From the NCBI GenBank assembly GCA_048772705.1, contig JBLWGC010000121.1:124001-188000 (forward strand): DNA of 64,000 nt, in the 5' to 3' direction. Below are positions 48,779-63,691 of this stretch, piece after piece; the stretch's first letter is position 1, and every line of letters begins with the position of its first letter. Source of the stretch: Leidyana gryllorum EB-2025a. Its lineage: Eukaryota > Protista > Apicomplexa. Made by a program: the position numbers and the translations under genes. The notes under the pieces were generated by a model that worked only from the letters and a program-made list of their open reading frames with translations, had not been told where the DNA came from and ran no database searches.

Positions 48779-48982
48779 TTCGTTCATGTCACAATGTTCT
48801 GACCTATATGAAACACTGACTCTACAATTTCTCCATTGATTGTCGTCAGCGTACTGGGGTTTGGGATACTGGGACGAGACATGTGTGCGCCAGAGGCCGC
48901 CTGCAAGATATCAATTTAGTCCGCTTCTGGTGTGATTGATTTAGTGTGTATCAGCAAATCTGTTTATACCTAAATCAGTATC

Positions 48983-49264
48983 ATGAAGGTTGCCACTATT
49001 GTTTTCGCTCTTATCTCTATTGTGTCTGCCGAGAAGCCAGCACTCCAGTTGAACCCTCTTGAGGGGGACGTGGAGGTGGATTCAGCGGGAGACGCGGATG
49101 TCGGTACTGCATCGGAGGATTCAAGTTCGACCGAGTTCACCAGTACGTCTATTGAAGAAACAACTACCAGTACAACTACAAAGAAGAGCGGAGCTGGTCC
49201 GAACACTCACTTGGCTGCGTTGGCTCCAGTGGTGGCAATCTTGGGGCTTAAGTATTTGGCTTGA
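48983..49264 (+). CDS. Small secreted Thr/Ser/acidic GPI-type surface protein (93 aa); paralog of 61806-62075
   Basis: Signal peptide, NPLEGD, TTTSTTTKKSGAGPNTHLAALAPVVAILGLKYLA. Confidence 0.85.
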   Translation: MKVATIVFALISIVSAEKPALQLNPLEGDVEVDSAGDADVGTASEDSSSTEFTSTSIEETTTSTTTKKSGAGPNTHLAALAPVVAILGLKYLA

Positions 49265-49514
49265 GTATTTTACTTCCAGGTTACCAATGCAACAATGGCG
49301 CGATACCAGTACAAAGACGAATGTATTGCGGGATACTTCTGCCGTCCGAGGAGGGGAGGGTGATCCCGTGGTGTTCCTGGCCCCCGATGAGAGGGTGTAG
49401 GAGTACCGAGTCTTGTCAGTCAATCCTGTCTATCTTTTTCGATGTTTGTGACTCGATCTGTGGATCTGGAACAAGTAGATCCAGAGAATCAACAAGTCTT
49501 GAGAACAGCTACTC

Positions 49515-49658
49515 CAGTGCTAACGTCTGAGCACAAGGCTCCCGACTTACCACAGCTCGGCCCAGTCTGAGATGTACATGCCCTTAAATGGGATCGTACA
49601 TCTCAAACTGGGCCGAGCTGTGGTAAGTCGGGAACCTTGTGCTAAGACGTTAGCACTG
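49515..49658. repeat. Near-perfect inverted repeat: 63-bp arms (49515-49577 / 49596-49658), 18-nt loop, 3 mismatches
   Basis: cagtgctaacgtct...ccagtctgagatgtac pairs with gtacatctcaaactgg...agacgttagcactg. Confidence 0.97.
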
Positions 49659-49768
49659 AAAAAAACGGTGCTATTCAGTCCAGCTATATCGTTTATGGAC
49701 TATGGTCTACGAGAAAGGATTACGCACGGTAGGGCCCTCTGTGCTCGTCATGTCGCCTGGACGGCTCA
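49568..49768 (-). mobile_element. LTR copy 1 (rearranged by the foldback)
   Basis: Begins tgagatgta and ends ggacggctca, like 61539-61670. It shares aacggtgctatt.agtccagctatatcgtttatgg and aaaggattacgcacggt. Confidence 0.85.
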
Positions 49769-51548
49769 ATGTGGACTGATCTGCGACAGAAGATGTCCCA
49801 ATGGGGACTGCCGAGACTGACGGAAGCAATCATAGGCACCATTTTCGAAAGTGGGGGTTCGTGGCAGACCCACACTTTCAGTTTTCCCAACCTGAAGTTG
49901 TTGGACATCTCCTGGTCAGAGTTGTCTGAAGGGTCGCTGCTTATCGATGCTCCGATATTGGAATGTTTAGTCGTCAAAAGGCACCAGCTCCCTTTCATTC
50001 GCCACGATCTAGCGGTGGAGCTCCATAGGGCTGTGGGTGACGGCCACGGTGGCCGCGACGACCGGATTGTGTCGGTGACAAAGCCACACTTCAGGTATTG
50101 GATCTTCAAAACTCAGGATACCGCCGCCTCTGTGACAAACGGGGGATGGCAGACATCCCCGTGTCTGGTGCGATATCTATCCGAGGCGCACGATTGGGCG
50201 AGCGATCCACTGGAGTTCCAAAACGGAATCACATACACGTGGCCAAAGTGCGCGAGGTGAGGGTTTCTGGAAGCATTGCGTTACATTTCGTTCAGAGGGT
50301 CACAGAGGCTCTGGGAATACCTCAAACGAGAATGGAGCGATCGGGAGCGCCATATGCATCCGCTCTGTCGCACTTACCTGCGAAATGTGCCGTTTGTGGC
50401 ATTTATATATGCCCAACGACTTGTGAATGGGACTCAAGAAGATGGCACTGTGCTGCGGCGCGTCGCCTCGAGTTTCGGATGGTTCCGGTTGGCCCGAACG
50501 AAGGATTTGGATTCACCGCCTCTCTGCTGGAAGGCTCTCCCACTGACCGAACCTCCCGCTGTATACCCTCCCCCATACTTTGGATTGATGAGTGACAACA
50601 CACTTTATTTGAGCGCCTCCGGCATCAATCATCCAGTGGAATGGTCAGAGGTGACACGGGTTCTCTATGTCAACGACAAATCCACTCCGACTCTGACTGA
50701 AAATTTACTCAGAACTCTGCCCTTTCAGAATCTGAAGCGCATTGAGTTACCTCTGGAGGGATGGGCGCTGGTTGAAGGACTGTGTGAGAGCGCGACCCCC
50801 CCCTCTTTGCCCTCCGACTGTGTCCGGGTGCTATGCCTTCACACCAAACGGGATGCCTCACCGGAAGCGATGCGACGTTTGATTGAAAGGTGTCAAATTC
50901 AATATGTCGGTGTCACCGGAGTGCCTTCCCAGATCGCGAAGTTGACTGACTGGTTTTTGGTTGGGCACTCCATTTGGCGACGGAGAGGCATTCGGGTCCG
51001 TTTCACGCTACCCGTGGCCTAAGGTCCAATTGGAACTCGTCTCGGGACTGTATACCGATGCCACTCTCCGAGCTGTGCTGAAATACATTGGGTGTTCGGC
51101 GGAAGACATCAGTCTGTGTCTGATGACGCAGACTGCCGACGATCCGGAACAATGGACAAAGCTGCGAGAAAGAAGTGTCCACGCTGCGTCCACTCTCCTT
51201 TCAGGCACTGGTTACTGCAGCGTTCCAAAGGCCCTCGTCAGTCAGTGGTACGCGCACATGTTGGAAGGGACATTGCGAGAGGCTCAGATCTCCGTCGGCG
51301 GACTGTTCGACGTCATCGCCCACACTTGCAAAGACGATTGGTGGTTGGGTCGTGCGCTGCTGAACCAACGCTTCAGAGAGTTGGAGTATTCGGGCCGTCC
51401 GGTGACGTTACCGGCTGTTTGTCCCGCGTCGATCTACGAAGAAGTCTTCCCCCAGAGAGAGAAGAAGTCCAGGGCTTCCAGAATGGTGCCTTCAGGGCTT
51501 TTACATTGTGCGAGTCATTTGTGGTCAAAATGGAAACCGCCTTTTTGA
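49769..51548 (+). pseudogene. F-box/LRR-like gene copy 1: 5'-truncated at the LTR (F-box lost) and frameshifted
   Basis: Starts at about codon 87 (WTDL) immediately after the LTR end. A net 23-bp deletion at ~51005 (cgtttcacgctac vs cgtttcggcctccaagctgcagcccttctgcgctac) shifts the frame. Confidence 0.85.
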
Positions 51549-52182
51549 GGTTTCTAATTCGACGCCTTTCTACGCTCATCACTTCAAACAGAGTGAAAGT
51601 CAGTCTCTGTGAGCTCTACGATCAGATAAAAGTAGGACAAAGACTGCAAGTGTAGTCAAATGCCGTGAAAATGAACACCGCATAAGACTTCCGGACTGAG
51701 AGCTTCAAGCAGTCGAAGGTGAGGCCGTGACATCTGTTGAATTCATCCACCCACACAACAGTGATGGAAGTGGTCGCTGAAGGGCTCCGAACTGCCTTTT
51801 GATATATCGTTGACAGGACTCACAATCTAAAGGCCTCGAGTAAGGCACTTCAAGGCTCTACTCAGTCTTTGTGGGTATCCTCAAGACTACAGACGGGCTG
51901 TCAGTATCGTCTGCTATACACTGTGTGGCACATGGCGTTGAAATCTAAGTTGAAAAGCCATTCGCTGAGCAGAGGTGTTTGTATCGTTGCATATATCAAG
52001 CAAGACGCGTCATCACCTCTGTGACCCCCATGTTTCGCTTCGTAAAGTGCTCGTTTCCAAGTTTACATCGGGATATTTTGACAACAACCCGTCCGGCATC
52101 AGTGCACAACATTGCCCGGGCAGGTGCTCCAGGTCGCACACGAGTGTGTGCATACACGCTTTCCCCTCTCAGGTGCTGATCA

Positions 52183-54249
52183 ATGCTGAATGACGACATC
52201 TGGACCCAAATTCTGGGGTTCCTATCGCTATGTGAGCTGACAAAAGCGGCAGGAATCTCCAAACAGCTACACAATCTTCTTCACTCTGAAAAGTCATTAC
52301 TGTTTTCTGGACGCTTATCTCTTAAACCGCAACAGTGGGCCTGGCTACAGCGCGCCTCTTGGTTTGAAGCATGGCTTCGCCGATCGTGCCCCTACCTAGA
52401 GTCCTTGACCTGGACAGGATCCACATTCAGACAGCTGATATGGACTGATCTGCTACAGAAGATGTCCCAATGGGGACTGCCGAGACTGACGGAAGCAATC
52501 ATAGGCACCGTTTTCGAAAGTGGGGGTTCGTGGCAGACCCACACTTTCAGTTTTCCCAACCTGAAGTTGTTGGACATCTCCTGGTCAGAGTTGTCTGAAG
52601 GGTCGCTGCTTATCGATGCTCCGACATTGGAATGTTTAGTCGTCAAAAGGCACCAGCTCCCTTTCATTCGCCACGATCTAGCGGTGGAGCTCCATAGGAC
52701 TGTGGGTGACGGCGACGGTGGCCGCGACGACCGGATTGTGTCGGTAACAAAGCCACAATTCAGGTATTGGATCTTCAAAACTCAGGACACCGCCGCCTCC
52801 GTGACAAACGGGGGATGGCAGACATCCCCGTGTCTGGTGCGATATCTATCCGAGGCGCACGATTGGGCGAGCGATCCACTGGAGTTCCGAATCGGAATCA
52901 CAAACCCGTGGCCAAAGTGCGCGAGGTGAGGGTTTCTGGAAGCATTGCGTTACATTTCGTTCAGAGGGTCACAGAGGCTCTGGGAATACCTCAAACGAGA
53001 ATGGAGCGATCGGGAGCGCCATATGCATCCGCTCTGTCGCACTTACCTGCGAAATGTGCCGTTTGTGACATATATATATGCTCAACGACTTGTGAATGGG
53101 ACTCAAGAAGATGGCACTGTGCTGCGGCGCGTCGACTCAAGTTTCGGATGGTTCCGGTTGGCCCGAACGAAGGATTTGGATTCACCGCCTCTCTGCTGGA
53201 AGGCTCTCCCACTGACCGAACCTCCCGCTGTATACCCTCCCCCATACTTTGGATTGATGAGTGACAACACACTTTATTTGAGCGCCTCCGGCATCAATCA
53301 TCCAGTGGAATGGTCAGAGGTGACACGGGTTCTCTATGTCAACGACAAATCCACTCCGACTCTGACTGAAAATTTACTCAGAACTCTGCCCTTTCAGAAT
53401 CTGAAGCGCATTGAGTTACCTCTGGAGGGATGGGCGCTGGTTGAAGGACTGTGTGAGAGCGCGACCCCCGCCTGTTGGCCCTCCGACTGTGTCCGGGTGC
53501 TATGCCTTCACACCAAACGGGATGCCTCACCGGAAGCGATGCGACGTTTGATTGAAAGGTGTCAAATTCAATATGTCGGTGTCACCGGAGTGCCTCTCCA
53601 GATCGCGAAGTTGACTGACTGGTTTTTGGTTGGGCACTCCATTTGGCGACGTAGAGGCATTCGGGTCCGTTTCGGCCTCCAAGCTGCAGCCCTTCTGCGC
53701 TACCCGTGGCCTAAGGTCCAATTGGAACTCGTCTCGGGACTGTATACCGATGCCACTCTCCGAGCTGTGCTGAAATACATTGGGTGTTCGGCGGAAGACA
53801 TCAGTCTGTGTCTGATGACGCAGACTGCCGATGATCCGGAGCAATGGACAACGCTGCGAGAAAGAAGTGTCCACGCTGCGTCCACTCTCCTTTCAATCAC
53901 TTGTTACTGCGCCGTTCCAAAGGCCCTCGTCAGTCAGTGGTACGCTGAAATGTTGGAAGGGACATTGCGAGAGGCTCAGACCTCCGTCGGCGGACTGTTG
54001 GACCTCATCGCCGAGACGTGCTCGGACGATTGGTGGTTGGGTCGTGCGTTGCTGAGCCAACGCTTCAGAGAGTTGGAGTATTTGGGCCTTCCGGTGACGT
54101 TACCGGCTGTCTGTCCCGCGTCGATCTACGAGGAGGTCTTCCCGCAAAGGGAGAAGAAGTCCAGGGCTTCCAGAATACTGCCTTCAGGGCTTTTACATTG
54201 TGCGAGTCATTTGTGGTCAAAATGGAAACCGCCTTTTGGAGGTTTCTAA
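52183..54249 (+). CDS. F-box protein with LRR-like segments, copy 2 (~675 aa); intron 52926-52964
   Basis: N-terminal MLNDDIWTQILGFLSLCELTKAAGISKQLHNLL fits the F-box consensus. CPYLESL, FPNLKLLDIS and FQNLKRIEL are LRR-like. A 39-bp GTGAGG..TTCAG intron joins the two ORFs in frame. Confidence 0.75.
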
Positions 54250-54875
54250 TTCGACGCCTTTCTACGCTCATCACTTCAAACAGAGTGAAAGTCAGTCTCT
54301 GTGAGCTCTACGATCAGATAAAAGTAGGACAAAGACTGCAAGTGTAGTCAAATGCCGTGAAAATGAACACCGCATAAGACTTCCGGACTGAGAGCATCAA
54401 GCAGTTGAAGGTGAGGCCGTGACATCTGTTGAATTCATCCACCCAAACAACAGTGATGGAAGTGGTCGCTGAAGGGCTCCGAACTGCCTTTGTGATATAT
54501 CGTTGATAGGACTCACAATCTGAAGGCGTCGAGTAAGGCACTTCAAAGCTCTGCTCAGTCTTTGTGGGTATCCTCAAGACTACAGGCGAACTGTCAGTGT
54601 CGTCTGCTATATACTGTGTGGCACATGGCGTTGCAATCTGAGTTGAAAATCCATTCGCTGAGCAGAGGTGTTTGCATCGTTGCATATATCAAGCAAGACG
54701 CGTCATCACCTCTGTGACCCCCTTGTTTCGCTTCGTAAAGTGCTCCTTTCCAAGTTTACATCGGGATATCCCGACAACAACCCGTCCGGCATCACTTTAC
54801 AACATTGCCCGGGCAGGTGCTCCAAGTCGCACACGAATGTGTGCATACAAGCCTTCCCCTCTCACGTGCTGATTA

Positions 54876-56933
54876 ATGCTGAGCGACGACATCTGGACCC
54901 AAATTCTGGGGTTCCTTCCGCTATGTGAGCTGACAAAAGCGGCAGGAATCTCCAAACAGCTACACAATCTTCTTCACTCTGAAAAGTCATTACTGTTTTC
55001 TGACCGCTTAGATCTTAACCCGTCACAGTGGGCCTGGCTACAGCGCGCCTCTTGGTTTGAGGCATGGCTTTGCCGATCGTGCCCCCACCTAGAGTCCTTG
55101 ACCTGGCTAGGATCCATATCCAGACAGCTGATATGGACTGATCTGCTACAGAAGATGTCCCAATGGGGACTGCCGAGACTGACGGAAGCAATCATAGGCA
55201 CCATTTTCGAAAGTGGGGAGTCGTGGCAGACCCACACTTTCAGTTTTCCCAACCTGAAGTTGTTGGACATCTCCTGGTCAGAGTTGTCTGAAGGTTCGCT
55301 GCTTATCGATGCTCCGATGTTGGAATGTATAGTCGTCAAAAGGCACCAGCTCCCTTTCATTCGCCACGATCTAGCGGTGGAGCTCCATAGGGCTGTGGGT
55401 GACGGCCACGGTGGCCGCGACGACCGGATTGTGTCGGTGACAAAGCCACACTTCAGGTATTGGATCTTCAAAACTCAGGATACCGCCGCCTCTGTGACAA
55501 ACGGGGGATGGCAGACATCCCCGTGTCTGGTGCGATATCTACCCGAGGCGCACGATTGGGCGAGCGATCCACTGGAGTTCCAAAACGGAATCACATACAC
55601 GTGGCCAAAGTGCGCGAGGTGAGGCTTTCTGGAAGCATTGCGTTACATTTCGTTCAGAGGGTCACAGAGGCTCTGGGAATACCTCAAACGAGAATGGAGC
55701 GATCGGGAGCGCCATATGCATCCGCTCTGTCGCACTTACCTGCGAAATGTGCCGTTTGTGGCATTTATATATGCCCAACGACTTGTGAATGGGACTCAAG
55801 AAGATGGCACTGTGCTGCGGCGCGTCGCCTCGAGTTTCGGATGGTTCCGGTTGGCCCGAACGAAGGATTTGGATTCACCGCCTCTCTGCTGGAAGGCTCT
55901 CCCACTGACCGAACCTCCCGCTGTATACCCTCCCCCATACTTTGGATTGATGAGTGACAACACACTTTATTTGAGCGCCTCCGGCATCAATCATCCAGTG
56001 GAATGGTCAGAGGTGACACGGGTTCTCTATGTCAACGACAAATCCACTCCGACTCTGACTGAAAATTTACTCAGAACTCTGCCCTTTCAGAATCTGAAGC
56101 GCATTGAGTTACCTCTGGAGGGATGGGCGCTGGTTGAAGGACTGTGTGAGAGCGCGACCCCCCCCTCTTTGCCCTCCGACTGTGTCCGGGTCCTATGCCT
56201 TCACACCAAACGGGATGCCTCACCGGAAGCGATGCGACGTTTGATTGAAAGGTGTCAAATTCAATATGTCGGTGTCACCGGAGTGCCTTCCCAGATCGCG
56301 AAGTTGACTGACTGGTTTTTGGTTGGGCACTCCATTTGGCGACGGAGAGGCATTCGGGTCCGTTTCGGGCTCCAAGCTGCAGCCCTTCTGCGCTACCCGT
56401 GGCCTAAGGTCCAATTGGAACTCGTCTCGGGACTGTATACCGATGCCACTCTCCGAGCTGTGCTGAAATACATTGGGTGTTCGGCGGAAGACATCAGTCT
56501 GTGTCTGATGACTCAGACTGCCGATGATCCGGAGCAATGGACAAAGTTGCGAGAAAGAAGTGTCCACGCTGCGTCCACTCTCTTCTCACGCACTTATCAT
56601 TACAGCGTTCCAAAGGCCCTCGTCAGTCAGTGGTACGCTGAAATGTTGGAAGGAACATTGCGAGAGGCTCAGACCTCCGTCGGCGGACTGTTCGACCTCA
56701 TCGCCGAGACGTGCCCGGACGATTGGTGGTTGGGTCGTGCGTTGCTGAACCAACGTTTCAAAGAGTTGGAATATTTGGGCCTTCCGGTGACGTTACCGGC
56801 TGTTTGTCCCGCGTCGATCTACGAAGAAGTCTACCCGCAGAGGGAGAAGAAGTCCAGGGCTTCCAGAATACTGCCCTCGGGGCTTTTACATTGTGCGAGT
56901 CGTTTGTGGTCAACATGGAAACAGCCTTTTTGA
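54876..56933 (+). CDS. F-box protein with LRR-like segments, copy 3 (~672 aa); intron 55619-55657
   Basis: Same structure as copy 2, with intact frames. Confidence 0.75.
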
Positions 56934-57869
56934 GGTTTCTAATTCGACGGCTTTCGACGTTTATCACTTCAAACAGAGTGAAAGTCAGTCTCTGTGAGCT
57001 CTACGGTCAGATAAAAGTAGGACAACGACTGCAAGTGTAGTCAAATGCCGTGAAAATGAACACCGCATAAGAGTTCCGGACTGGGAGCTTCAATCAGTTC
57101 GATGATGGTTCGGAAAAAGATGAGAGAGAGACGTGTCGGCGTGTATCAACGCCGTCTGAACGGCATAACGGTGTCTGGTTGTCTCCACTGCCACAGGTTG
57201 TAGGTATTGTAATCTTCATTAAAGTCCCCTCGACCCCCGATGGATTGCTCCTTCCGAGCTAAGCTGCAGGACACCGTCGACCCGCACACAAAAAGCTTCA
57301 GTAAAGGGCTGGAGTCACTCGGCCAACGAGGGATCGAGATTAAGGCCTGGTGTAAGGAGCAGACCCCGCCGGCCAGCGTCTCCCCGATGCAAAAAGGAAG
57401 AAGCTCGGCGAGGGAGTTTGCCAAAGATGGCCGGTCACCTACTTTCGCCGATACCCCGAAGTGAGAAGGAAGTGGCCAGTCGGGACTGATAGCATTAATA
57501 GTCGTGTGCCTGATGGTTGGGTATGCGGAAGGCTTCGAGTTACAGTGCTTTGGGGCAGCGCCTTTACAGCGAGCGGTGTTTCGGGATTGTTTCTTTTTGT
57601 ACTCTAACTCCGTTCGCAGAAACAACGATATTCTCTCGTCTTGGACCAAGTCCAGGCTGGTGGGGTCTTCACTAACAGAATTTGGAACATTAAAAGGCTC
57701 ACATTTTGCGGGTCAGGGCGGGTCAGGCGGTGGGACCGAACATTGTTGGTGATCTGAATGAGGGTACCTAGTTGTTCAGGTTTACCCCTTCACATTCAGT
57801 TCGATTATCACTCCAATTTTGGGAGGGATGTCTCGCCATTACGAACGACTGGGTTTGCAGTCGTACGCT

Positions 57870-58336
57870 TCATTGTGAGGGATCGGTCGCATTAACAACG
57901 GGTGACCCGAATTTGCCCGCTCTCTCACTAGGGGCAGAATCGAGCTGCTGCTCTGTGGTTGGCTCGTCGTCATTCGATGCTTCTAATGCGGGCTCCCTCT
58001 GGTTTGCCGCCATATATTCCCCACAGGCCTCCAATTGTCGCAGCAAAGATCGCCACTGGTCGTGTCTTGCGTCTCTTTTCGTCAAACACTTCTTCAAATC
58101 CTTCAGCACCCACTTGAAGGCTGCAGAGACGCAGGAACGTAGGCTGTTAGGGCCATTATCAACTTTAGATCAACCCGAACTTACAGTTGACCCAGCGCCA
58201 CGCTTACTGCAGTCTCGGGGACGCCTTCCCACCAAGAAGTGTCGGGCTCGGCTGTTCTGGACTGCCTCGAACGTGGGTGAAGGATTATCCAGAGAACGCC
58301 CAGGTACACGGCCGCTTCCACGGCAATTGCGAGCAT
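57870..58336 (-). CDS. Hypothetical spliced gene with hydrophobic N-terminus; intron 58144-58184; may continue toward 57146
   Basis: MLAIAVEAAVYLGVLWIILHPRSRQ...VALGQL|LRSCVSAAFKWVLKDLKKCL... is joined in frame by a 41-bp GTAAGT..CTAACAG intron. The 3' end is uncertain. Confidence 0.5.
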
Positions 58337-58458
58337 CGTCGCCTAGTGTTCTTTCAATTGATTCTTGATTCTGTCACAGCACATTTCTTTGCAACGGATG
58401 GTCGTTGGTTATGAGACGGTCTCGCGCCCACAGCTTCAATCAGATTTTATTGGCCCTG

Positions 58459-58493
58459 GCTGTCTCGCTGTCTCGCTGTCTCGCTGTCCCGCT
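58459..58493. repeat. 8-bp tandem repeat (GCTGTCTC) x ~4 abutting LTR copy 2
   Basis: gctgtctcgctgtctcgctgtctcgctgtcccgct. Confidence 0.85.
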
Positions 58494-58608
58494 TAAGATG
58501 TAAGATCTCATTGAGGGAGTGAGGTGAAACGGTGCTATTGAGTCCAGCTATATCGTTTATGGTCTATGGGGTACGGAAAAAGGATTACGCACGGTTGGGG
58601 CCCTGTGT
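58494..58608 (-). mobile_element. LTR copy 2 (3' LTR of the gag-pol unit; lacks the ggacggctca terminus)
   Basis: taagatgtaagatctcattgagggagtgaggtgaaacggtgctattgagtccagctatatcg...aggattacgcacggt aligns with 61539-61655. Confidence 0.88.
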
Positions 58609-59279
58609 GGCCCCCAGCCAGTGGGTGGCCTACCGTAGCGGTAAAGGTGCCTGGATACAGAGACAGTTGCAGAGGCTGCTGCATTTCATTGTCAACGGTG
58701 AAGGCGACGTCTGGCCTGGCCCGCTTACGGGTCTCAATGGTCGTCGGCTTTCGTCGTTCGCGCTGGAGTCGGTCCCGGAGGACTTCACTTGGCGAAAGTG
58801 TCTCGAACCCTTTTAGTTCTTCTGTGGTCAGATATTAATTTCAAAGCCTCGTCAGACGGCTCTTCAATCTCAATCAAGTTGGAATAGTGCACTGTAGACG
58901 CAATGTCGGTAACCCTTAAGCGGCTTAACCTTCGTACCGCCTCCAGGCAGGCCAGTCTCCAGAACAACACCAGGACTGCTGTAGGGTGGTCGGAACCGAT
59001 TGGCTACGGACGCTTGCTGCTTTCCAGTCGTTAGACCTTCGTGTCGTAGGCAGACCACGATGTCACCGACTTCCGGGATATACCATACATCGCGCATTCT
59101 TGCCTTCGCCTTGTCCCGTGACGAGCGGTTTGCATCAGCGCGCAGATTCTCGATGTGCCTTAAGCGTTCTGGCAGTGGGTGGTTAGCCCGACTGAACTCT
59201 TGGCTTCCAGGTATCGACATCTCCAATCCGGTGAGTAGCGTGAACGGTGCAACTCCAGTCGTTGGGTGAGGTGTAGCCC

Positions 59280-60166
59280 GACGCATCGACCACAAATCCT
59301 AGGTACAGGAACTGTCGGTGCTTCACCTCGCCAAGGCGTTTCAGTACTTCGGCTAACAGGTCGTTATGCTTTTGTATCGTGTCGGCGTAGATTACGATAT
59401 CGTCCAGGTACACTAACACTCCTTGACCTACCAGCGATCCTAGGGTAGTATGCATGACTCTTTGGAAGGTCGCGGGTGCGTTACGGAGACCGAATGGCAT
59501 TGCTACGAACGCGTACAGCCCTCGGGTGGTTATCACTGTCGTCTTCAGTACATCTTCCGCCCCCATGCGGATTTGATAATAACCAGCTTTCAAATCCAAA
59601 GAGCTGAAGACGCACGCACCGCTCAGGCTCGACACCAGCGTCTGAATGCTGGGCAGTGGATACACGTCCGGGACTGTAACCTCATTCAGTCGGCGATAGT
59701 CGACGCAGACGCGCACCTCACCGGTCTTCTTAGGGACGCATACTACGGGGGACGCCCAGGGGGAGCTCTCTACTTTCCTCATGTACCCCTTCTTTGTAAG
59801 TTCGTCGGACTGGCGATGGACCTCGTTCTCCATGTCTGGGTGTATACGCTTGGGTTTATCGGCCACTGGTTTCGCCCCCGGCTTCAACTCAATCCGGTGA
59901 TGCTCGACAGTACATTCGGCGGCTGCTGTTCGAACCCAACACTGCGGATGTGCTTTCATCACTCCCAAGACACTCTCTTTGGCCTCGGCGCCCCAGTCGT
60001 CTCGGATGACCGTCCCCTCTGTCGCCTTTTGTAGGACTCTGGCATGCCGTAACCGCGGATCGTTAGCCCTCATCTTCGCCATAGGGGCCATTCCTTCGGT
60101 ACCTCTGATGATGTCTGACGTCACTTCTACATTCAACCCGTGTCGTTGGAGGTAATCGATGCCCAA
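59280..60166 (-). pseudogene. Gypsy-type reverse transcriptase region
   Basis: Canonical RT motifs including YLDD. It ends at FLYLGFVVDASG, where it is fused to the integrase tail. Confidence 0.93.
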
Positions 60167-61466
60167 TAAGCTATGGGTGGCTCCTTAAAGTACCAATACG
60201 TCCTCCACGGTGGTGATTGGCCCAACGGAGATCGTGACCGTAGCGATCCCTCCTTGCGCCTGCTCGCCATTTGCCGTGGTCATCACCAACTTTGTCTTCC
60301 ACAGAGGTATTGGGTCCATCGAATTGGACTTCCGCACCAATTAGAGGTCGAGTGGGCTTAGTACTGTGACATCAGCTCCCGTGTCTACAACGAATACAAC
60401 AGGCTGCCCGTTGACAGTCCCAATCACATTATTCACGGCGTGCTCGGCTCTGTGCGTGGCACATCTCGTCACCTTTGGTGGTACCTCCGCGATCTCGCCT
60501 TCCTCGGGCGTGACCTCTGGTGGGGTTGGCCTCTTTTTCCTCTTCGGGATTTTTGGAGGGCACTGTCGCTCACTTCTGTGTCCGGCACGGACGGTTCCGC
60601 CATTTGTTCTGCCTCGCACTTCTGCTTCTGTTCCTCTTGGTTCGCCTTCCGTTGCTGAATCCTCTTACGCACCGTACTTTCGACCCGACCTTCTGCAGAG
60701 TTGCGACTGTGGAGTGGTCACGTCGACATCCGTCAAAGACGAGTTTGTTCCCAATCCACTGGAGTCGGATGCCCCCTTGGCCACCGTCATCGGCTCCGAT
60801 CTGGACGCATTGGGCTCCGCCATGCCCCTTCGCCTTGCAGTGTGGGCACGCTTCTTGGGCACAGTATCGCTGAATGTGTCCCTTCTCGCCACATCTTGGG
60901 CATCGGCTCATCCGTGTAGTCCTTGGCGGTGCGTTTGACAGCAGCGATACGCCCGCCCGACTCGAGACTTCCCAATGTGGGCTTTCCTCCGACTGGTAAC
61001 TCCATGTAGAGCTCCTTACTGATGATGGCTTGTACGAAGCTTCGGACCCATGTCACATTCAAGTCGCCCACAGCTCTTCGTTCGGTCGTCGCTGACGCAG
61101 TCGTGTGTAGTAGGCGTAGCGTTTCCTGACGTATGAAATCGGTTCGCGGTCTCCAGACCCTGGGAACCGCCTCGTTTCCAACACGATGTAGTGCCTCCGG
61201 CCTTGGGAAGAGACAACAAGCCAAGGCGTCTCGGTACTGAGCCCAGTCAGTATCCCGTCCCGAGATGGCCTGTGCCTTGTCGGCATCGTCTGGGGAGAGT
61301 GCGCTGCGGACTATATGGCCGTCGAAACTCCCGGATCTCTCGCCTTGATCTCCCACTGATCCAGTTGGGCATCGAACTCCTCTTCGGTGCTCCACTGTAG
61401 CACGACCGATACAACCTCTTCGCTTTACTGAGGTCCGAAACGGTGTAGGGCGCTCTTCTGGCTACC

Positions 61467-61469
<3 letters not shown>

Positions 61470-61500
<31 letters not shown>
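61470..61500. repeat. (CT)15 microsatellite in the retroelement leader
   Basis: Direct reading. Confidence 0.95.
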
Positions 61501-61504
<4 letters not shown>

Positions 61505-61517
61505 TGGACTGGTTCTC

Positions 61518-61536
61518 ATTCCCGGCAGATCCACCA
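61518..61536 (-). promoter_or_regulatory. Primer-binding site, probably tRNA-Ala
   Basis: Minus strand reads LTR end ...ACATCTCA-cg-TGGTGGATCTGCCGGGAAT. The complement ATTCCCGGCAGATCCACCA looks like a tRNA 3' end with A73 and U70 (G3:U70 is the Ala identity element). Confidence 0.75.
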
Positions 61537-61538
61537 CG

Positions 61539-61670
61539 TGAGATGTAAGATCCCATTGAGGGGAATGAGGTGGAACGGTGTTATTGAGTCCAGCTATATC
61601 GTTTATCGTTTATGGGGTACGGAAAAAGGATTACGCACGGTAGGGGGGCCCTTCTGTGTTGGACGGCTCA
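61539..61670 (-). mobile_element. LTR copy 3 (5' LTR, 132 bp, TGAG...CTCA termini)
   Basis: TG...CA ends with a 4-bp terminal inverted repeat; directly upstream of the PBS in element orientation. Confidence 0.9.
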
Positions 61671-61805
61671 CACTCCACAGCTATTGGGACAATCCTGTGT
61701 GCGACAGCCTCGAACAGTGCATTTGACAGTAATCAGAAAGCTTCTTTCGGTTCACATCTTTCACCGCTTACCCCTTCACGAGCTTCTTTGCCCTTCAACA
61801 AAAAG

Positions 61806-62075
61806 ATGAAGTTCACTACTGTATTCATGGTCTTCTTCGGCGTTGCCCTCGGTCAGGACTCAGCCTATTTCAACCCATTGGTCGGCGACAGCGAAGGTGA
61901 TGTTGGTGCCGACGGAGATGACACTTCCTCAACGGAGATGACCACCACCTCCAGTTACGGTGACGACGAAGTAACCACTACTTCTACTACAAAGAAGAGC
62001 GGTGTGTCCGCTAACACCCACCTGGCTGCTCTGGCGCCAGTTGCAGCCATCCTCGGAATGAAGTATCTCGCTTAG
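61806..62075 (+). CDS. Small secreted Thr/Ser/Asp-rich GPI-type surface protein (89 aa); paralog of 48983-49264
   Basis: MKFTTVFMVFFGVALG signal peptide, NPLVGD, TTTSTTKKSGVSANTHLAALAPVAAILGMKYLA. Confidence 0.85.
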   Translation: MKFTTVFMVFFGVALGQDSAYFNPLVGDSEGDVGADGDDTSSTEMTTTSSYGDDEVTTTSTTKKSGVSANTHLAALAPVAAILGMKYLA

Positions 62076-63046
62076 GTCTCACTAAACCTCACCGTATTTG
62101 GTTTGGTGAATGCTGCCCATCAAGATGATCGGCGTCTTCATTGTATGAGTGCATCCGTTTGCAACAGCGAGCTCACTTATACCTCGGTTCATCCCACTTG
62201 TCTGCGAGAGTCCTCTCGCACTTTTGGCCCAATTTTCCTACCAACCTATCAATCCACACTTTGTGGTGGCTGCTAAATACTCTTGTGAATATCTGACTCA
62301 TCGAGATTGTGCCCTTGGGATCTGCAGCGACAGCTATCTTCGGCAGCGCGCTGACTGGTGCTGCCTGCAATCGTGATGAGCTTAATTTGGGGTCGCCATC
62401 AAACTTTGAATGAGTCGTTGATCAGAGAACTAGTTGGCACCGACTGACCCAAATTCGTTATCAGTGAACACTGGGACTCCAATTCGCACTCAACTCCTCG
62501 GGATAATGGTGTGGGGGGACAGTTTCGTCGGCGGGCGGGGATATATTCACCAGAAAATTCCAACTGCTAACGCACACACTGCCTAAATTATTACTTTTTG
62601 TCACCCGACTATGACCGGCTGCTCGCTGTGTTGACTTTGATTGTCGCAGTCGTGGATCTATTGCTGTTCTCACCATTCGACGAGTGTACTGACATTCTGA
62701 TCGACATGCATGTGCTGCTAGGGTGGTCAAATGTATGAGAGATCACCATGAGATTGCCGTCTCCCTGGATTTGCCTGTAATATCGAGGTCTCCCGGGTAG
62801 TCAGAGGGTAAGAGACACTGGGAGAAAGTATGTAGATCTCCGATGCTTTCCGAGTCGGAGGCCCTTTTTCGCCTATGATGAAATATCGTGTCAGGAAGAC
62901 TCGCTGCGATAAACACCTTTAGGGAGCCTTTCTTGTGCCCATTGTGTGTTCGATCTGTCTCCACTGGGACTAACGAGTGTGACGGTTGAGATAATTGTAA
63001 GCTTTGAGCGATCGTTCCTTCTTTGTTGGTGCTGTATCACGTCTAC

Positions 63047-63286
63047 ATGAAATTCATCACTCTTTTCTCCGTTGCCCTCACCCTCGTCGCACTTGCCGAC
63101 GTTTCGGAAGTGGCACCCTCTGGACCTCCTTCTGCTGGATCGGAACCCACAGTCACGTCCCCGACACCGACTCCCACCACTCCTACGCCGACAACAACCT
63201 CCACCAACAAGTCTGGAGCTGAACAGTATATCACAGGAGTCACCCCATTGGCCGCATTGGTAGCGGTGAAGTATTGGGCATTTTGA
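63047..63286 (+). CDS. Small secreted Pro/Thr-rich GPI-type surface protein (79 aa)
   Basis: MKFITLFSVALTLVALA signal peptide, PTPTPTTPTPTTT, NKSG...PLAALVAVKYWAF. Confidence 0.82.
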   Translation: MKFITLFSVALTLVALADVSEVAPSGPPSAGSEPTVTSPTPTPTTPTPTTTSTNKSGAEQYITGVTPLAALVAVKYWAF

Positions 63287-63294
63287 TTAGGTCG

Positions 63295-63486
63295 GCCTGA
63301 AGTGTAGACAGTGTGTCTGCCTGAAGTGTAGACAGTGTGTCTGCCTGAAGTGTAGACAGTGTGTCTGCCTGAAGTGTAGACAGTGTGTCTGCCTGAAGCG
63401 TAGACAGTGTGTCTGCCTGAAGTGTAGACAGTGTGTCTGCCTGAAGCGTAGACAGTGTGTCTGCCTGAAGTGTAGACAGTGTGTCT
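63295..63486. repeat. Minisatellite: 8 x 24 bp (GCCTGAAG[T/C]GTAGACAGTGTGTCT)
   Basis: Exactly 192 bp; two units carry T>C. Confidence 0.97.
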
Positions 63487-63691
63487 GTCTACTGCATTGT
63501 ATTTTGTTGTGTTAGCAATATCGTCTGAGCGTGGCCGGTGGGTGGGGAACTTCGTGCAACACGGGCAGCAAGGCGAGTTGGGGAAGATCATCGAATTTGG
63601 GATTCACTGTGTGCGAAAAGGGTGACCCGCCATTTATTGTTGAGTTTTCTGACTGTTGTTCTAGAATTATTAGCCATCCGCTAGGCATACA

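What the first reader, a model, noticed from the sequence alone, without database searches (positions are those of the whole stretch)
49563..61675. Candidate composite three-LTR gypsy element carrying host-type F-box gene cargo, inserted in a surface-mucin cluster
Seen: three same-orientation LTR copies (49568, 58494, 61539) enclose first three F-box/LRR-like genes plus a spliced hypothetical gene, then gag-pol. The 5 bp outside the outermost LTRs are CAGTC (49563-67) and CACTC (61671-75), a 4/5 match. The inner pairings do not match (CCGCT/CACTC; CAGTC/ATGTG). The block sits between two paralogous small mucin genes. Known: gypsy integrases make 4-5-bp target duplications, and LTR elements can transduce host genes. 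Inference: the whole 12.1 kb, or a smaller precursor before the triplication, arrived as one unit carrying ubiquitin-ligase adaptors. The F-box genes lie antisense to the element, which would explain retained introns. Caveats: the LTRs are visibly diverged, the TSD is imperfect, and the 58336 gene keeps a sense-orientation intron.
Basis: partly seen in the sequence, partly recalled or inferred. Interest (0 to 1): 0.85.

Follow-up and report, generated by a model that had tools for sequence, protein, structure and literature searches.

The report
LTR-bounded F-box gene block, not cargo
Three short retrotransposon end-repeats really do bracket a 12-kb block of F-box genes, but the block was most likely cut and pasted by ordinary recombination between repeat copies, and not carried as cargo by a jumping element.

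Summary
Three same-orientation copies of a roughly 140-bp LTR lie at 49568, 58494 and 61539. The outer flanks are CAGTC and CACTC, a 4/5 match. The block sits between two paralogous mini-mucin genes.

The composite-element reading does not hold:
- LTR2 and LTR3 are mates: 68/72 identical and sharing a tail deletion. They flank a dead minus-strand Ty3/gypsy copy.
- LTR1 is of another subtype, with 63/71 identity to LTR3 and a different tail. It has no purine tract beside it.
- A paralogous locus on contig C173 has the same F-box array and both flanks of the element, but no element. The genes were therefore there first.
- A second copy on C133 is 98-99.5% identical up to LTR position ~40 and then switches subtype. 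That is a homologous-recombination breakpoint inside the LTR.
- The family has 65 or more DNA matches genome-wide, mostly without LTRs.

The first F-box copy is a pseudogene cut exactly at the end of LTR1.

Best reading: independent LTR insertions into or beside a resident array, then LTR-homology recombination that set both block ends. The block may have been placed into an element already sitting in the mini-mucin spacer. This is a known kind of event, here in a gregarine genome. Assembly could not be checked with reads.

The parts
48983..49264 (+). Mini-mucin gene A (93 aa; signal peptide, Ser/Thr-rich, GPI-type tail); left neighbour of the block
   Evidence: ORF and translation. Its tail is paralogous to 61965-62073 (repeat D17).
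49515..49658 (.). Foldback at the left edge of LTR1. It consists of 53 nt of flank plus LTR bases 1-10, an 18-nt loop that is LTR 11-28 inverted, and then the inverted copy of the arm.
   Evidence: repeat I1: 63-nt arms, 95% complementary. Sequence read. The order of the pieces fits a two-step template switch (inference).
49563..49567 (.). Left outer flank CAGTC; candidate half of a target-site duplication
49568..49768 (-). LTR1: complete at both termini, of a different subtype from LTR2/LTR3, with no target-site duplication of its own
49769..51554 (+). F-box gene copy 1, a pseudogene. It starts at codon 86, directly at the end of LTR1, and has a frameshift near 51000.
52183..54249 (+). F-box gene copy 2, intact. 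Exon 1 is 52183-52925, a 39-nt GT..AG intron is 52926-52964, and exon 2 is 52965-54249.
   Evidence: (Pfam F-box, 20.6 bits).
54876..56933 (+). F-box gene copy 3, intact, with the same two-exon structure
57094..58493 (.). 'A' region that follows this array type. It is conserved next to the paralogous arrays on C133 (98%) and C173 (59-69%), with patchy minus-strand coding signal.
58494..58630 (-). LTR2, the 3' LTR of the dead element. Its inner end has diverged, and its left flank is an 8-mer microsatellite.
58631..61538 (-). Internal region of a deleted Ty3/gypsy element: gag-like ORF 60787-61395, CCHC knuckle ORF 60570-60911, RT ORF 59183-60166, integrase-tail ORF 58870-59295, and a tRNA-3'-end-like primer site at 61519-61536
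   Evidence: (RVT_1, 87 bits).
61539..61670 (-). LTR3, the 5' LTR and mate of LTR2
61671..61675 (.). Right outer flank CACTC
61806..62075 (+). Mini-mucin gene B; right neighbour of the block

Best explanation
The block is a mosaic built by homologous recombination at LTR copies. It is not a retrotransposon with cargo.

Shown:
- A lineage-specific two-exon F-box gene family forms tandem arrays at many loci.
- A short-LTR Ty3/gypsy family inserted repeatedly in or beside these arrays.
- One now-dead copy (LTR2, internal region, LTR3, on the minus strand) sits just downstream of this array type.
- Another LTR (LTR1) sits inside an F-box gene at codon 85/86.
- Both ends of the 12.1-kb block coincide with exact LTR termini.
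- The sister copy on C133 changes LTR subtype at LTR position ~40.

Inferred:
- Ectopic recombination or gene conversion between LTR copies set the block's ends.
- The most likely version is that an element of this family already sat in the roughly 435-bp spacer between two adjacent mini-mucin genes, which gives the CAGTC/CACTC duplication. The F-box array, with its downstream region and dead element, was then brought in through LTR or element homology, either by double crossover or by integration of an LTR-LTR excision circle.

The two intact F-box genes are ordinary resident genes that keep their sense intron.
For: LTR relationships:
- At LTR positions 36-107, LTR2-LTR3 is 68/72 identical and LTR1-LTR3 is 63/71.
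- In the tail, LTR2 and LTR3 share a deletion of about 14 nt, whereas LTR1 matches the generic solo type at 33/34 (alignments).

Paralogous empty site:
- C173:5483-6783 aligns with the left flank of the element as it stands on C133, and C173:6920-8114 aligns with its right flank. No element lies between them.
- The same downstream sequence also accompanies F-box copies on C202, C36 and C43.

Breakpoints:
- C121 and C133 are 95-96% identical in the F-box units, but 98-99.5% identical from 57200 to 59330 and 98% from 61014 to 61487. They are then only 53/65 identical from LTR position ~40 onward, and beyond the LTR they share no homology.
- Copy 1 of the F-box gene begins exactly at the terminal CA of LTR1. 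Units 2 and 3 and the C133 units are uninterrupted at that site.

Family distribution:
- There are 65 or more DNA matches on more than a dozen contigs, and most have no LTR nearby.
- The LTRs beside the C173 and C47 arrays are in the opposite orientation. The C47 copy is a local insertion in an array spacer.
- A diverged member of the family lies 4 kb further along this same contig among the mini-mucins.

For import into a resident element:
- The outer flanks match at 4/5.
- Removing the block leaves 303 + 135 bp of spacer, against 445 and 371 bp for neighbouring mini-mucin spacers.

Precedent: three-LTR complexes with or without duplications are a described product of inter-element recombination (PMC4079214). 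LTR gene conversion and ectopic recombination are treated in PMC7251063, of which only the title and abstract were seen.
Against: - LTR3 is of the LTR2 type almost to its last base. A crossover with a resident LTR must therefore have involved a sister copy of the same subtype, or have lain in the internal region. This cannot be seen in the sequence.
- LTR1 is a patchwork of subtype markers and not a clean two-part hybrid.
- No empty or solo-LTR version of the mini-mucin spacer exists in the assembly, and no related genome was available.
- The 4/5 flank match could be chance (about 5%).
- The left end of the C133 array is beyond the contig end, so the donor structure is not known.
Confidence: 0.5

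Rival explanations
1. The array is native to this position. The F-box array always lay between the mini-mucins. Three or four independent LTR insertions were followed by two LTR-LTR deletions. One removed the 5' end of gene copy 1 and everything upstream of it. The other removed the usual downstream flank. Under this reading the 4/5 flank match is chance.
For:
- LTRs without duplications are the classic scar of inter-element deletion (PMC4079214).
- LTR1 and the LTR2-LTR3 pair both lack duplications of their own.
Against: - It needs more insertions and two deletions that happen to leave a spacer of normal length (438 bp) and flanks matching at 4/5.
- LTR3 shows no sign of being a hybrid.
- No remnant of the downstream flank is found on this contig.
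Confidence: 0.27
2. A read-through transcript running from LTR3 to LTR1 on the minus strand was reverse-transcribed and integrated as one 12-kb composite element. It carried the F-box genes antisense, so their introns were kept.
For: - Both block ends are exact LTR termini, and the outer flanks match at 4/5.
- The F-box genes are antisense to the element and keep a 39-nt intron.
- A primer-binding site lies beside LTR3.
Against: - Reverse transcription makes the two outer LTRs identical. Here the outer pair is the least alike, and LTR3 carries the tail (U3 side) of LTR2 and not that of LTR1.
- There is no purine-rich tract next to the inner end of LTR1 (sequence read).
- The array plus its downstream region exists without the element at a paralogous locus.
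- The only other copy ends at a homologous-recombination breakpoint inside the LTR.
- The family's internal region occurs only in these two deleted copies.
Confidence: 0.07
3. Assembly chimera. The contig was mis-joined inside the near-identical F-box units or the C121/C133 duplicate, so the two LTR junctions do not belong to one locus.
For: - C133 ends inside the array.
- The units are 95-98% alike, and the tract around LTR2 is 98-99.5% alike between the contigs.
Against: - The units cluster by contig. The C133 units group with 95/97 support, and u1 groups with u3 at 81/95.
- The block lies in the middle of a 293-kb contig.
Confidence: 0.08

Closest known systems
Multi-LTR ('three-LTR') complexes and solo LTRs without duplications, produced by inter-element unequal recombination. 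Described in plants, for example Cassandra elements in pear (PMC4079214).
   Same: - Three direct LTRs.
- Individual LTR pairs lack target-site duplications.
- The outer flanks may keep one.
- Subtype switches occur inside an LTR.
   Different: One of the two 'internal' segments here is 8.7 kb of host genes (an F-box array plus its downstream region) and not retroelement sequence. The host is a gregarine with a 15.5-Mb genome.
Segmental duplications and translocations bounded by LTR elements, as with yeast Ty and delta elements (from general knowledge; not checked in a paper here)
   Same: Dispersed LTR copies act as homology for ectopic recombination. Duplicated blocks end exactly in an LTR.
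   Different: The LTRs here are only about 140 bp long. The moved unit is a fast-evolving tandem gene array.
Gene capture or transduction by LTR retrotransposons, such as maize Bs1 and rice and maize gene-fragment-bearing elements (from general knowledge)
   Same: Host sequence lies between LTRs.
   Different: - Captured sequence normally lies inside a single element between matching LTRs and moves with it.
- Here the outer LTRs do not match.
- The genes are complete, with promoters, spacers and introns.
- They pre-exist at paralogous loci without the element.
Ty3/gypsy LTR retrotransposons (RT nearest to metagenomic and gregarine copies)
   Same: - RVT_1 reverse transcriptase.
- Nearest relatives carry Ty3-type RNase H domains.
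- TG..CA LTRs and a 5-bp duplication.
- A tRNA-like primer site 2 nt from the LTR.
   Different: - This copy lacks RNase H and most of the integrase.
- The LTRs are unusually short (132-142 nt).
- The nearest intact family in this genome is only 60% identical in RT.

Membership tests
Ty3/gypsy LTR retrotransposon (the unit 58494-61670) | Reverse transcriptase of the Ty3/gypsy type | tested here: met
   Pfam RVT_1 scores 87 bits. The best database relatives are 43-51% identical, and many carry PF17919 or PF17917. One is named as a Gregarina niphandrodes retrotransposon protein.
Ty3/gypsy LTR retrotransposon (the unit 58494-61670) | Direct LTRs with TG..CA ends | tested here: met
   LTR3 and the solo copies run from TGAGATG to GGCTCA. 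LTR2 starts with TA and its inner end has diverged.
Ty3/gypsy LTR retrotransposon (the unit 58494-61670) | Primer-binding site complementary to a tRNA 3' end next to the 5' LTR | tested here: inconclusive
   Positions 61519-61536 read like a tRNA 3' end including the CCA, 2 nt from LTR3. Two other exact 15-mer matches exist in the genome, but they could not be fetched to confirm that they are tRNA genes.
Ty3/gypsy LTR retrotransposon (the unit 58494-61670) | Gene order gag - protease - RT - RNase H - integrase | tested here: not met
   The RT ORF runs straight into a 141-aa ORF that looks like an integrase tail. RNase H and the integrase core are absent. This is a deleted, non-autonomous copy.
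Ty3/gypsy LTR retrotransposon (the unit 58494-61670) | 5-bp target-site duplication flanking the element | tested here: not met
   The flanks are CCGCT and CACTC, a 1/5 match. Solo copies of the family elsewhere do have perfect duplications.
Composite or transducing LTR element (49568-61670 as one mobile unit) | Outer LTRs are mates, that is identical at insertion and the closest pair now | tested here: not met
   LTR1-LTR3 is 63/71 with different tails. LTR2-LTR3 is 68/72 with a shared tail deletion.
Composite or transducing LTR element (49568-61670 as one mobile unit) | Target-site duplication outside the outer LTRs | tested here: inconclusive
   CAGTC and CACTC match at 4/5. The chance probability is about 1.6% per pairing, or about 5% for three pairings.
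Composite or transducing LTR element (49568-61670 as one mobile unit) | Polypurine tract inside the 3' LTR (LTR1) for plus-strand priming | tested here: not met
   The sequence beside the inner end of LTR1 is F-box coding sequence with no purine run.
Composite or transducing LTR element (49568-61670 as one mobile unit) | Further copies of the whole unit at other sites with new duplications | tested here: not met
   The only other copy is on C133. It shares the inner part, but its homology ends at a subtype switch inside the LTR, and its far flank is colinear with an element-free paralogue. Its left end is not assembled.
F-box protein (the genes in the block) | N-terminal F-box motif | tested here: met
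   Pfam PF00646 matches residues 2-38 at 20.6 bits against a cut-off of 20.5, E = 4e-4. This is marginal but in the right place. The motif is conserved in 20 or more paralogues.
F-box protein (the genes in the block) | Leucine-rich-repeat substrate domain (FBXL type) | tested here: inconclusive
   - There is no Pfam LRR hit.
- The AlphaFold model is poor (pLDDT 50.8), with an alternating strand/helix core at residues 95-305.
- Foldseek gives only weak matches to generic beta/alpha proteins.

The most novel reading that the evidence does not exclude
In this gregarine, remnants of one short-LTR gypsy family may serve as portable homology 'handles'. Through them, whole arrays of a fast-evolving, lineage-specific F-box family would be copied or moved between loci by LTR-LTR recombination or circle re-integration. 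The 12.1-kb block would then be one such transfer into a surface-mucin cluster.

Observations that prompt this reading:
- Four of about 11 independent LTR sites lie in or within 3 kb of F-box arrays, which cover roughly 1% of the genome.
- Block or homology boundaries fall at or near LTRs on C121 (both ends), inside the C133 LTR, and 130 bp from the C173 LTR.
Probability: 0.3. Interest if true: 0.55.

Novelty: new member of a known kind. Interest (0 to 1): 0.33.

Why it matters
The claim of a retrotransposon that transduces complete, intron-bearing host genes would have been unusual, and it is not supported. What remains is a clear, datable example of dead LTR copies acting as recombination substrates that reshape a parasite's expanded gene families, here F-box adaptors next to surface mucins. 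Little has been described about transposable-element-driven genome change in gregarines. It also warns annotators that one of the three F-box copies is a pseudogene and that the 'gag-pol' is a deleted relic.

Tried and rejected
- Empty site for the whole block. The left flank (48780-49600) and right flank (61660-62500) are unique in the genome. Neighbouring mini-mucin spacers are too diverged to serve as a paralogous empty site.
- Related genomes. The tool states that this genome has no relatives in the collection, so the synteny test in sister species could not be run.
- F-box homologues outside this genome. None were found.
- Fold of the F-box C-terminal domain. The model has low confidence and only weak, generic beta/alpha matches, so neither LRR nor any other fold is claimed.
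- Telomere repeats at contig ends that carry F-box arrays. None were seen, so 'subtelomeric' is not claimed.
- Mini-mucin genes next to the C133, C173 and C47 arrays. None were found.
- Join of the C173 and C92 LTR flanks, which share the 5-mer GATAC. No open reading frame crosses the join, so the link stays a coincidence-level lead.
- A clean two-part hybrid origin for LTR1. Its subtype markers are interleaved, so this simple version was dropped.
- A consensus or repaired version of the element was neither built nor needed.


Full report
SETTING

The window is C121:124001-188000 of a 15.5-Mb, 237-contig eukaryotic assembly. Earlier follow-ups in this scan call the organism a gregarine. I did not test that, but one RT relative is named as a Gregarina niphandrodes retrotransposon protein.

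THE OBSERVATION

Repeat finding and alignment show three direct copies of one short LTR. An alignment of all 14 genomic hits fixes the ends. The LTR begins TGAGATG and ends GGCTCA, and the generic length is 142 nt.
- LTR1 is 49568-49768. It is lengthened by a foldback.
- LTR2 begins at 58494.
- LTR3 is 61539-61670.

The family does make 5-bp duplications. Solo copies on C152 (CTTTT), C109 (GGCGG) and C36 (TACAC) have perfect ones, the C102 copy has a perfect 6-base match (GGGGTG), and C230 has 4/5. A match of 4/5 or better has a chance probability of 16/1024, about 5% for three possible pairings.

Both neighbours are paralogous mini-mucins.

THE RETROELEMENT

All retroelement ORFs lie on the minus strand:
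- a gag-like ORF at 60787-61395;
- a CX2CX4HX4C knuckle in 60570-60911, which Pfam scores below its threshold;
- an RT ORF at 59183-60166 (RVT_1, 87 bits);
- a 141-aa ORF at 58870-59295 that reads like the end of an integrase (my reading; no Pfam hit).

RNase H and the integrase core are missing. The plus strand at 61519-61536 reads like a tRNA 3' end with CCA, 2 nt from LTR3. LTR3 is therefore the 5' LTR and LTR2 the 3' LTR.

The nearest RT relatives are Ty3/gypsy-type. The internal DNA occurs only here and in a further-deleted copy on C133. The genome holds 122 or more other gypsy RT matches, but the nearest is only 60% identical in protein.

THE GENES

The 2.69-kb unit is repeated three times. 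Each gene has two exons and a 39-nt GT..AG intron, at 52926-52964 in copy 2. A 70%-identical paralogue has the same two open exons in different frames, which confirms the intron.

Copies 2 and 3 are intact. Copy 1 lacks codons 1-85, and so lacks the F-box. It starts directly after the terminal CA of LTR1 and has a frameshift near 51000.

The F-box call is marginal but correctly placed (20.6 bits). There are no homologues outside this genome. The C-terminal fold is unresolved.

IS THE FAMILY LTR-ASSOCIATED?

The unit has 65 or more DNA matches on more than a dozen contigs, mostly in tandem arrays without this LTR. At least 14 paralogues keep exon 2 open and at least 20 keep exon 1 open. A diverged member lies 4 kb beyond mini-mucin B on the same contig.

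Four of about 11 independent LTR sites are in or within 3 kb of arrays: LTR1, the LTR2/3 element, C173 and C47. That is far above the roughly 1% expected from the arrays' share of the genome. The C173 and C47 copies are in the opposite orientation. The C47 copy is a simple local insertion into an array spacer with a small target deletion. This pattern points to a preference for, or tolerance of, insertion in the arrays. It does not show that the genes ride on the element.

THE PARALOGOUS LOCI

C133:203772-213530 carries the same arrangement: three units, the 1.4-kb 'A' region, LTR2, the internal region with an extra 1.7-kb deletion, and an LTR. The contig then ends inside the array.

C173:1-8114 is an older paralogue at 85% identity. 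It is colinear with both flanks of the element as it stands on C133. C173 5483-6783 matches the left flank, and 6920-8114 matches the right flank. No element lies between them. Sequence like that right flank also accompanies F-box copies on C202, C36 and C43.

The array, the A region and the downstream flank are therefore the older architecture, and the element is a later insertion beside resident genes. In the window that downstream flank is absent. After LTR3 comes mini-mucin B.

BREAKPOINTS INSIDE LTRs

Identity between C121 and C133 changes along the block:
- The F-box units are 95-96% identical, including the non-coding spacer. Differences are spread over all three codon positions.
- Positions 57200-59330 are 98-99.5% identical, and 61014-61487 are 98% identical.
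- From LTR position ~40 onward the C133 copy is of another subtype, 53/65 against LTR3 and 61/65 against the C173 LTR. Beyond the LTR there is no homology.

A sharp change of relatedness inside a repeat is the mark of homologous recombination or gene conversion, not of integration.

WHICH LTRs ARE MATES?

At positions 36-107, LTR2-LTR3 is 68/72, LTR1-LTR2 is 65/71 and LTR1-LTR3 is 63/71. In the tail, LTR2 and LTR3 share a deletion of about 14 nt. LTR1 instead matches the generic solo type at 33/34 and shares markers with the C47 copy.

Reverse transcription of a composite RNA would have made LTR1 and LTR3 identical, with the tail (U3) of LTR1 on both. The opposite is seen. There is also no purine tract beside the inner end of LTR1.

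WHAT STILL SPEAKS FOR ARRIVAL AS A BLOCK

- Both ends of the block are exact LTR termini.
- The outer flanks match at 4/5.
- Taking out 49568-61670 leaves 303 + 135 bp between the stop of mini-mucin A and the start of mini-mucin B. Neighbouring mini-mucin spacers are 445 and 371 bp.

I therefore favour, at about even odds, that an element of this family already sat in that spacer. The array with its dead element would then have been brought in through LTR or element homology, by double crossover or by re-integration of an LTR-LTR excision circle.

The main rival is that the array is native here and was trimmed on both sides by LTR-LTR deletions. Both are forms of inter-element recombination, a described process that yields three-LTR complexes with or without duplications (PMC4079214). 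PMC7251063 deals with LTR gene conversion and ectopic recombination, but I saw only its title and abstract.

Composite retrotransposition keeps about 7%.

THE FOLDBACK AT THE LEFT EDGE OF LTR1

The region 49515-49658 has 63-nt arms that are 95% complementary. It reads as: flank plus LTR 1-10, then the inverse of flank plus LTR 1-28, then LTR from about position 33 onward. A two-step template switch on an originally intact flank-LTR junction gives exactly this order (inference). CAGTC is therefore probably the original flank.

LIMITS

- The flanks are unique in the assembly, so there is no empty allele.
- No related genome was available.
- The units cluster by contig, which argues against a mis-join inside the array but does not prove it.

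Exons were searched separately by reference.

Noticed in passing
window 16115-48778 (+): One open reading frame of 10,887 codons built from 30-nt repeats, presumably a giant mucin. The opposite strand also stays open for 8,123 codons, most likely a by-product of the repeat.
   Followed up: no
window 49596-49668: All three mismatches between the foldback arms are G in the left-arm complement against A in the right arm. The LTR bases just after the right arm read as a run of A where other copies have G-rich sequence. This is a one-sided G-to-A pattern around the rearrangement.
   Followed up: partly
window 57200-61575 versus C133:203850-206590: This tract is 98-99.5% identical between the two contigs, although the adjoining F-box units are only 95-96% identical even in non-coding spacer. 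That suggests a recent gene-conversion tract bounded on the left by the array end and on the right by LTR position ~40.
   Followed up: partly
window 58452-58493; C133 about 205261-205295: An 8-mer microsatellite (CGCTGTCT-like) directly abuts LTR2. It has one repeat more in the window than on C133.
   Followed up: no
L010 (C173:8245-8379) and L005 (C92:189371-189512): Neither solo LTR has its own duplication. However, the left flank of the C173 copy and the right flank of the C92 copy are both GATAC, as if they descend from one insertion split by LTR-LTR exchange. The chance of one such match among the unpaired flanks is about 3%. No ORF spans the join.
   Followed up: partly
Genome-wide (and tables): Four of about 11 independent sites of this LTR family lie in or within 3 kb of F-box arrays, which make up roughly 1% of the genome. 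A fifth, on C102, is about 700 bp from a weak F-box-like ORF (25% identity, E = 7.5e-4).
   Followed up: partly
Genome-wide: A 15-mer differing by one base from the primer-site sequence (TTCCCGGCAGATGCA) occurs about 350 times. It is probably the tRNA-derived module of another LTR family noted elsewhere in this scan.
   Followed up: no
window 57146-58237 (-): The region between the array and LTR2 shows patchy protein-level conservation with C173 on the minus strand in several frames. This is compatible with a small multi-exon gene that accompanies this array type.
   Followed up: partly
window 63243-63530: A tandem array of nine 24-nt units inside or next to another small mucin-type gene.
   Followed up: no
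Contig ends C173:1, C133:213530, C47:215242, and the starts of C9, C213, C186 and C204: Many contigs begin or end inside F-box arrays. No telomere repeats were seen at the ends inspected, so these are assembly breaks in repeats and not shown to be chromosome ends.
   Followed up: partly
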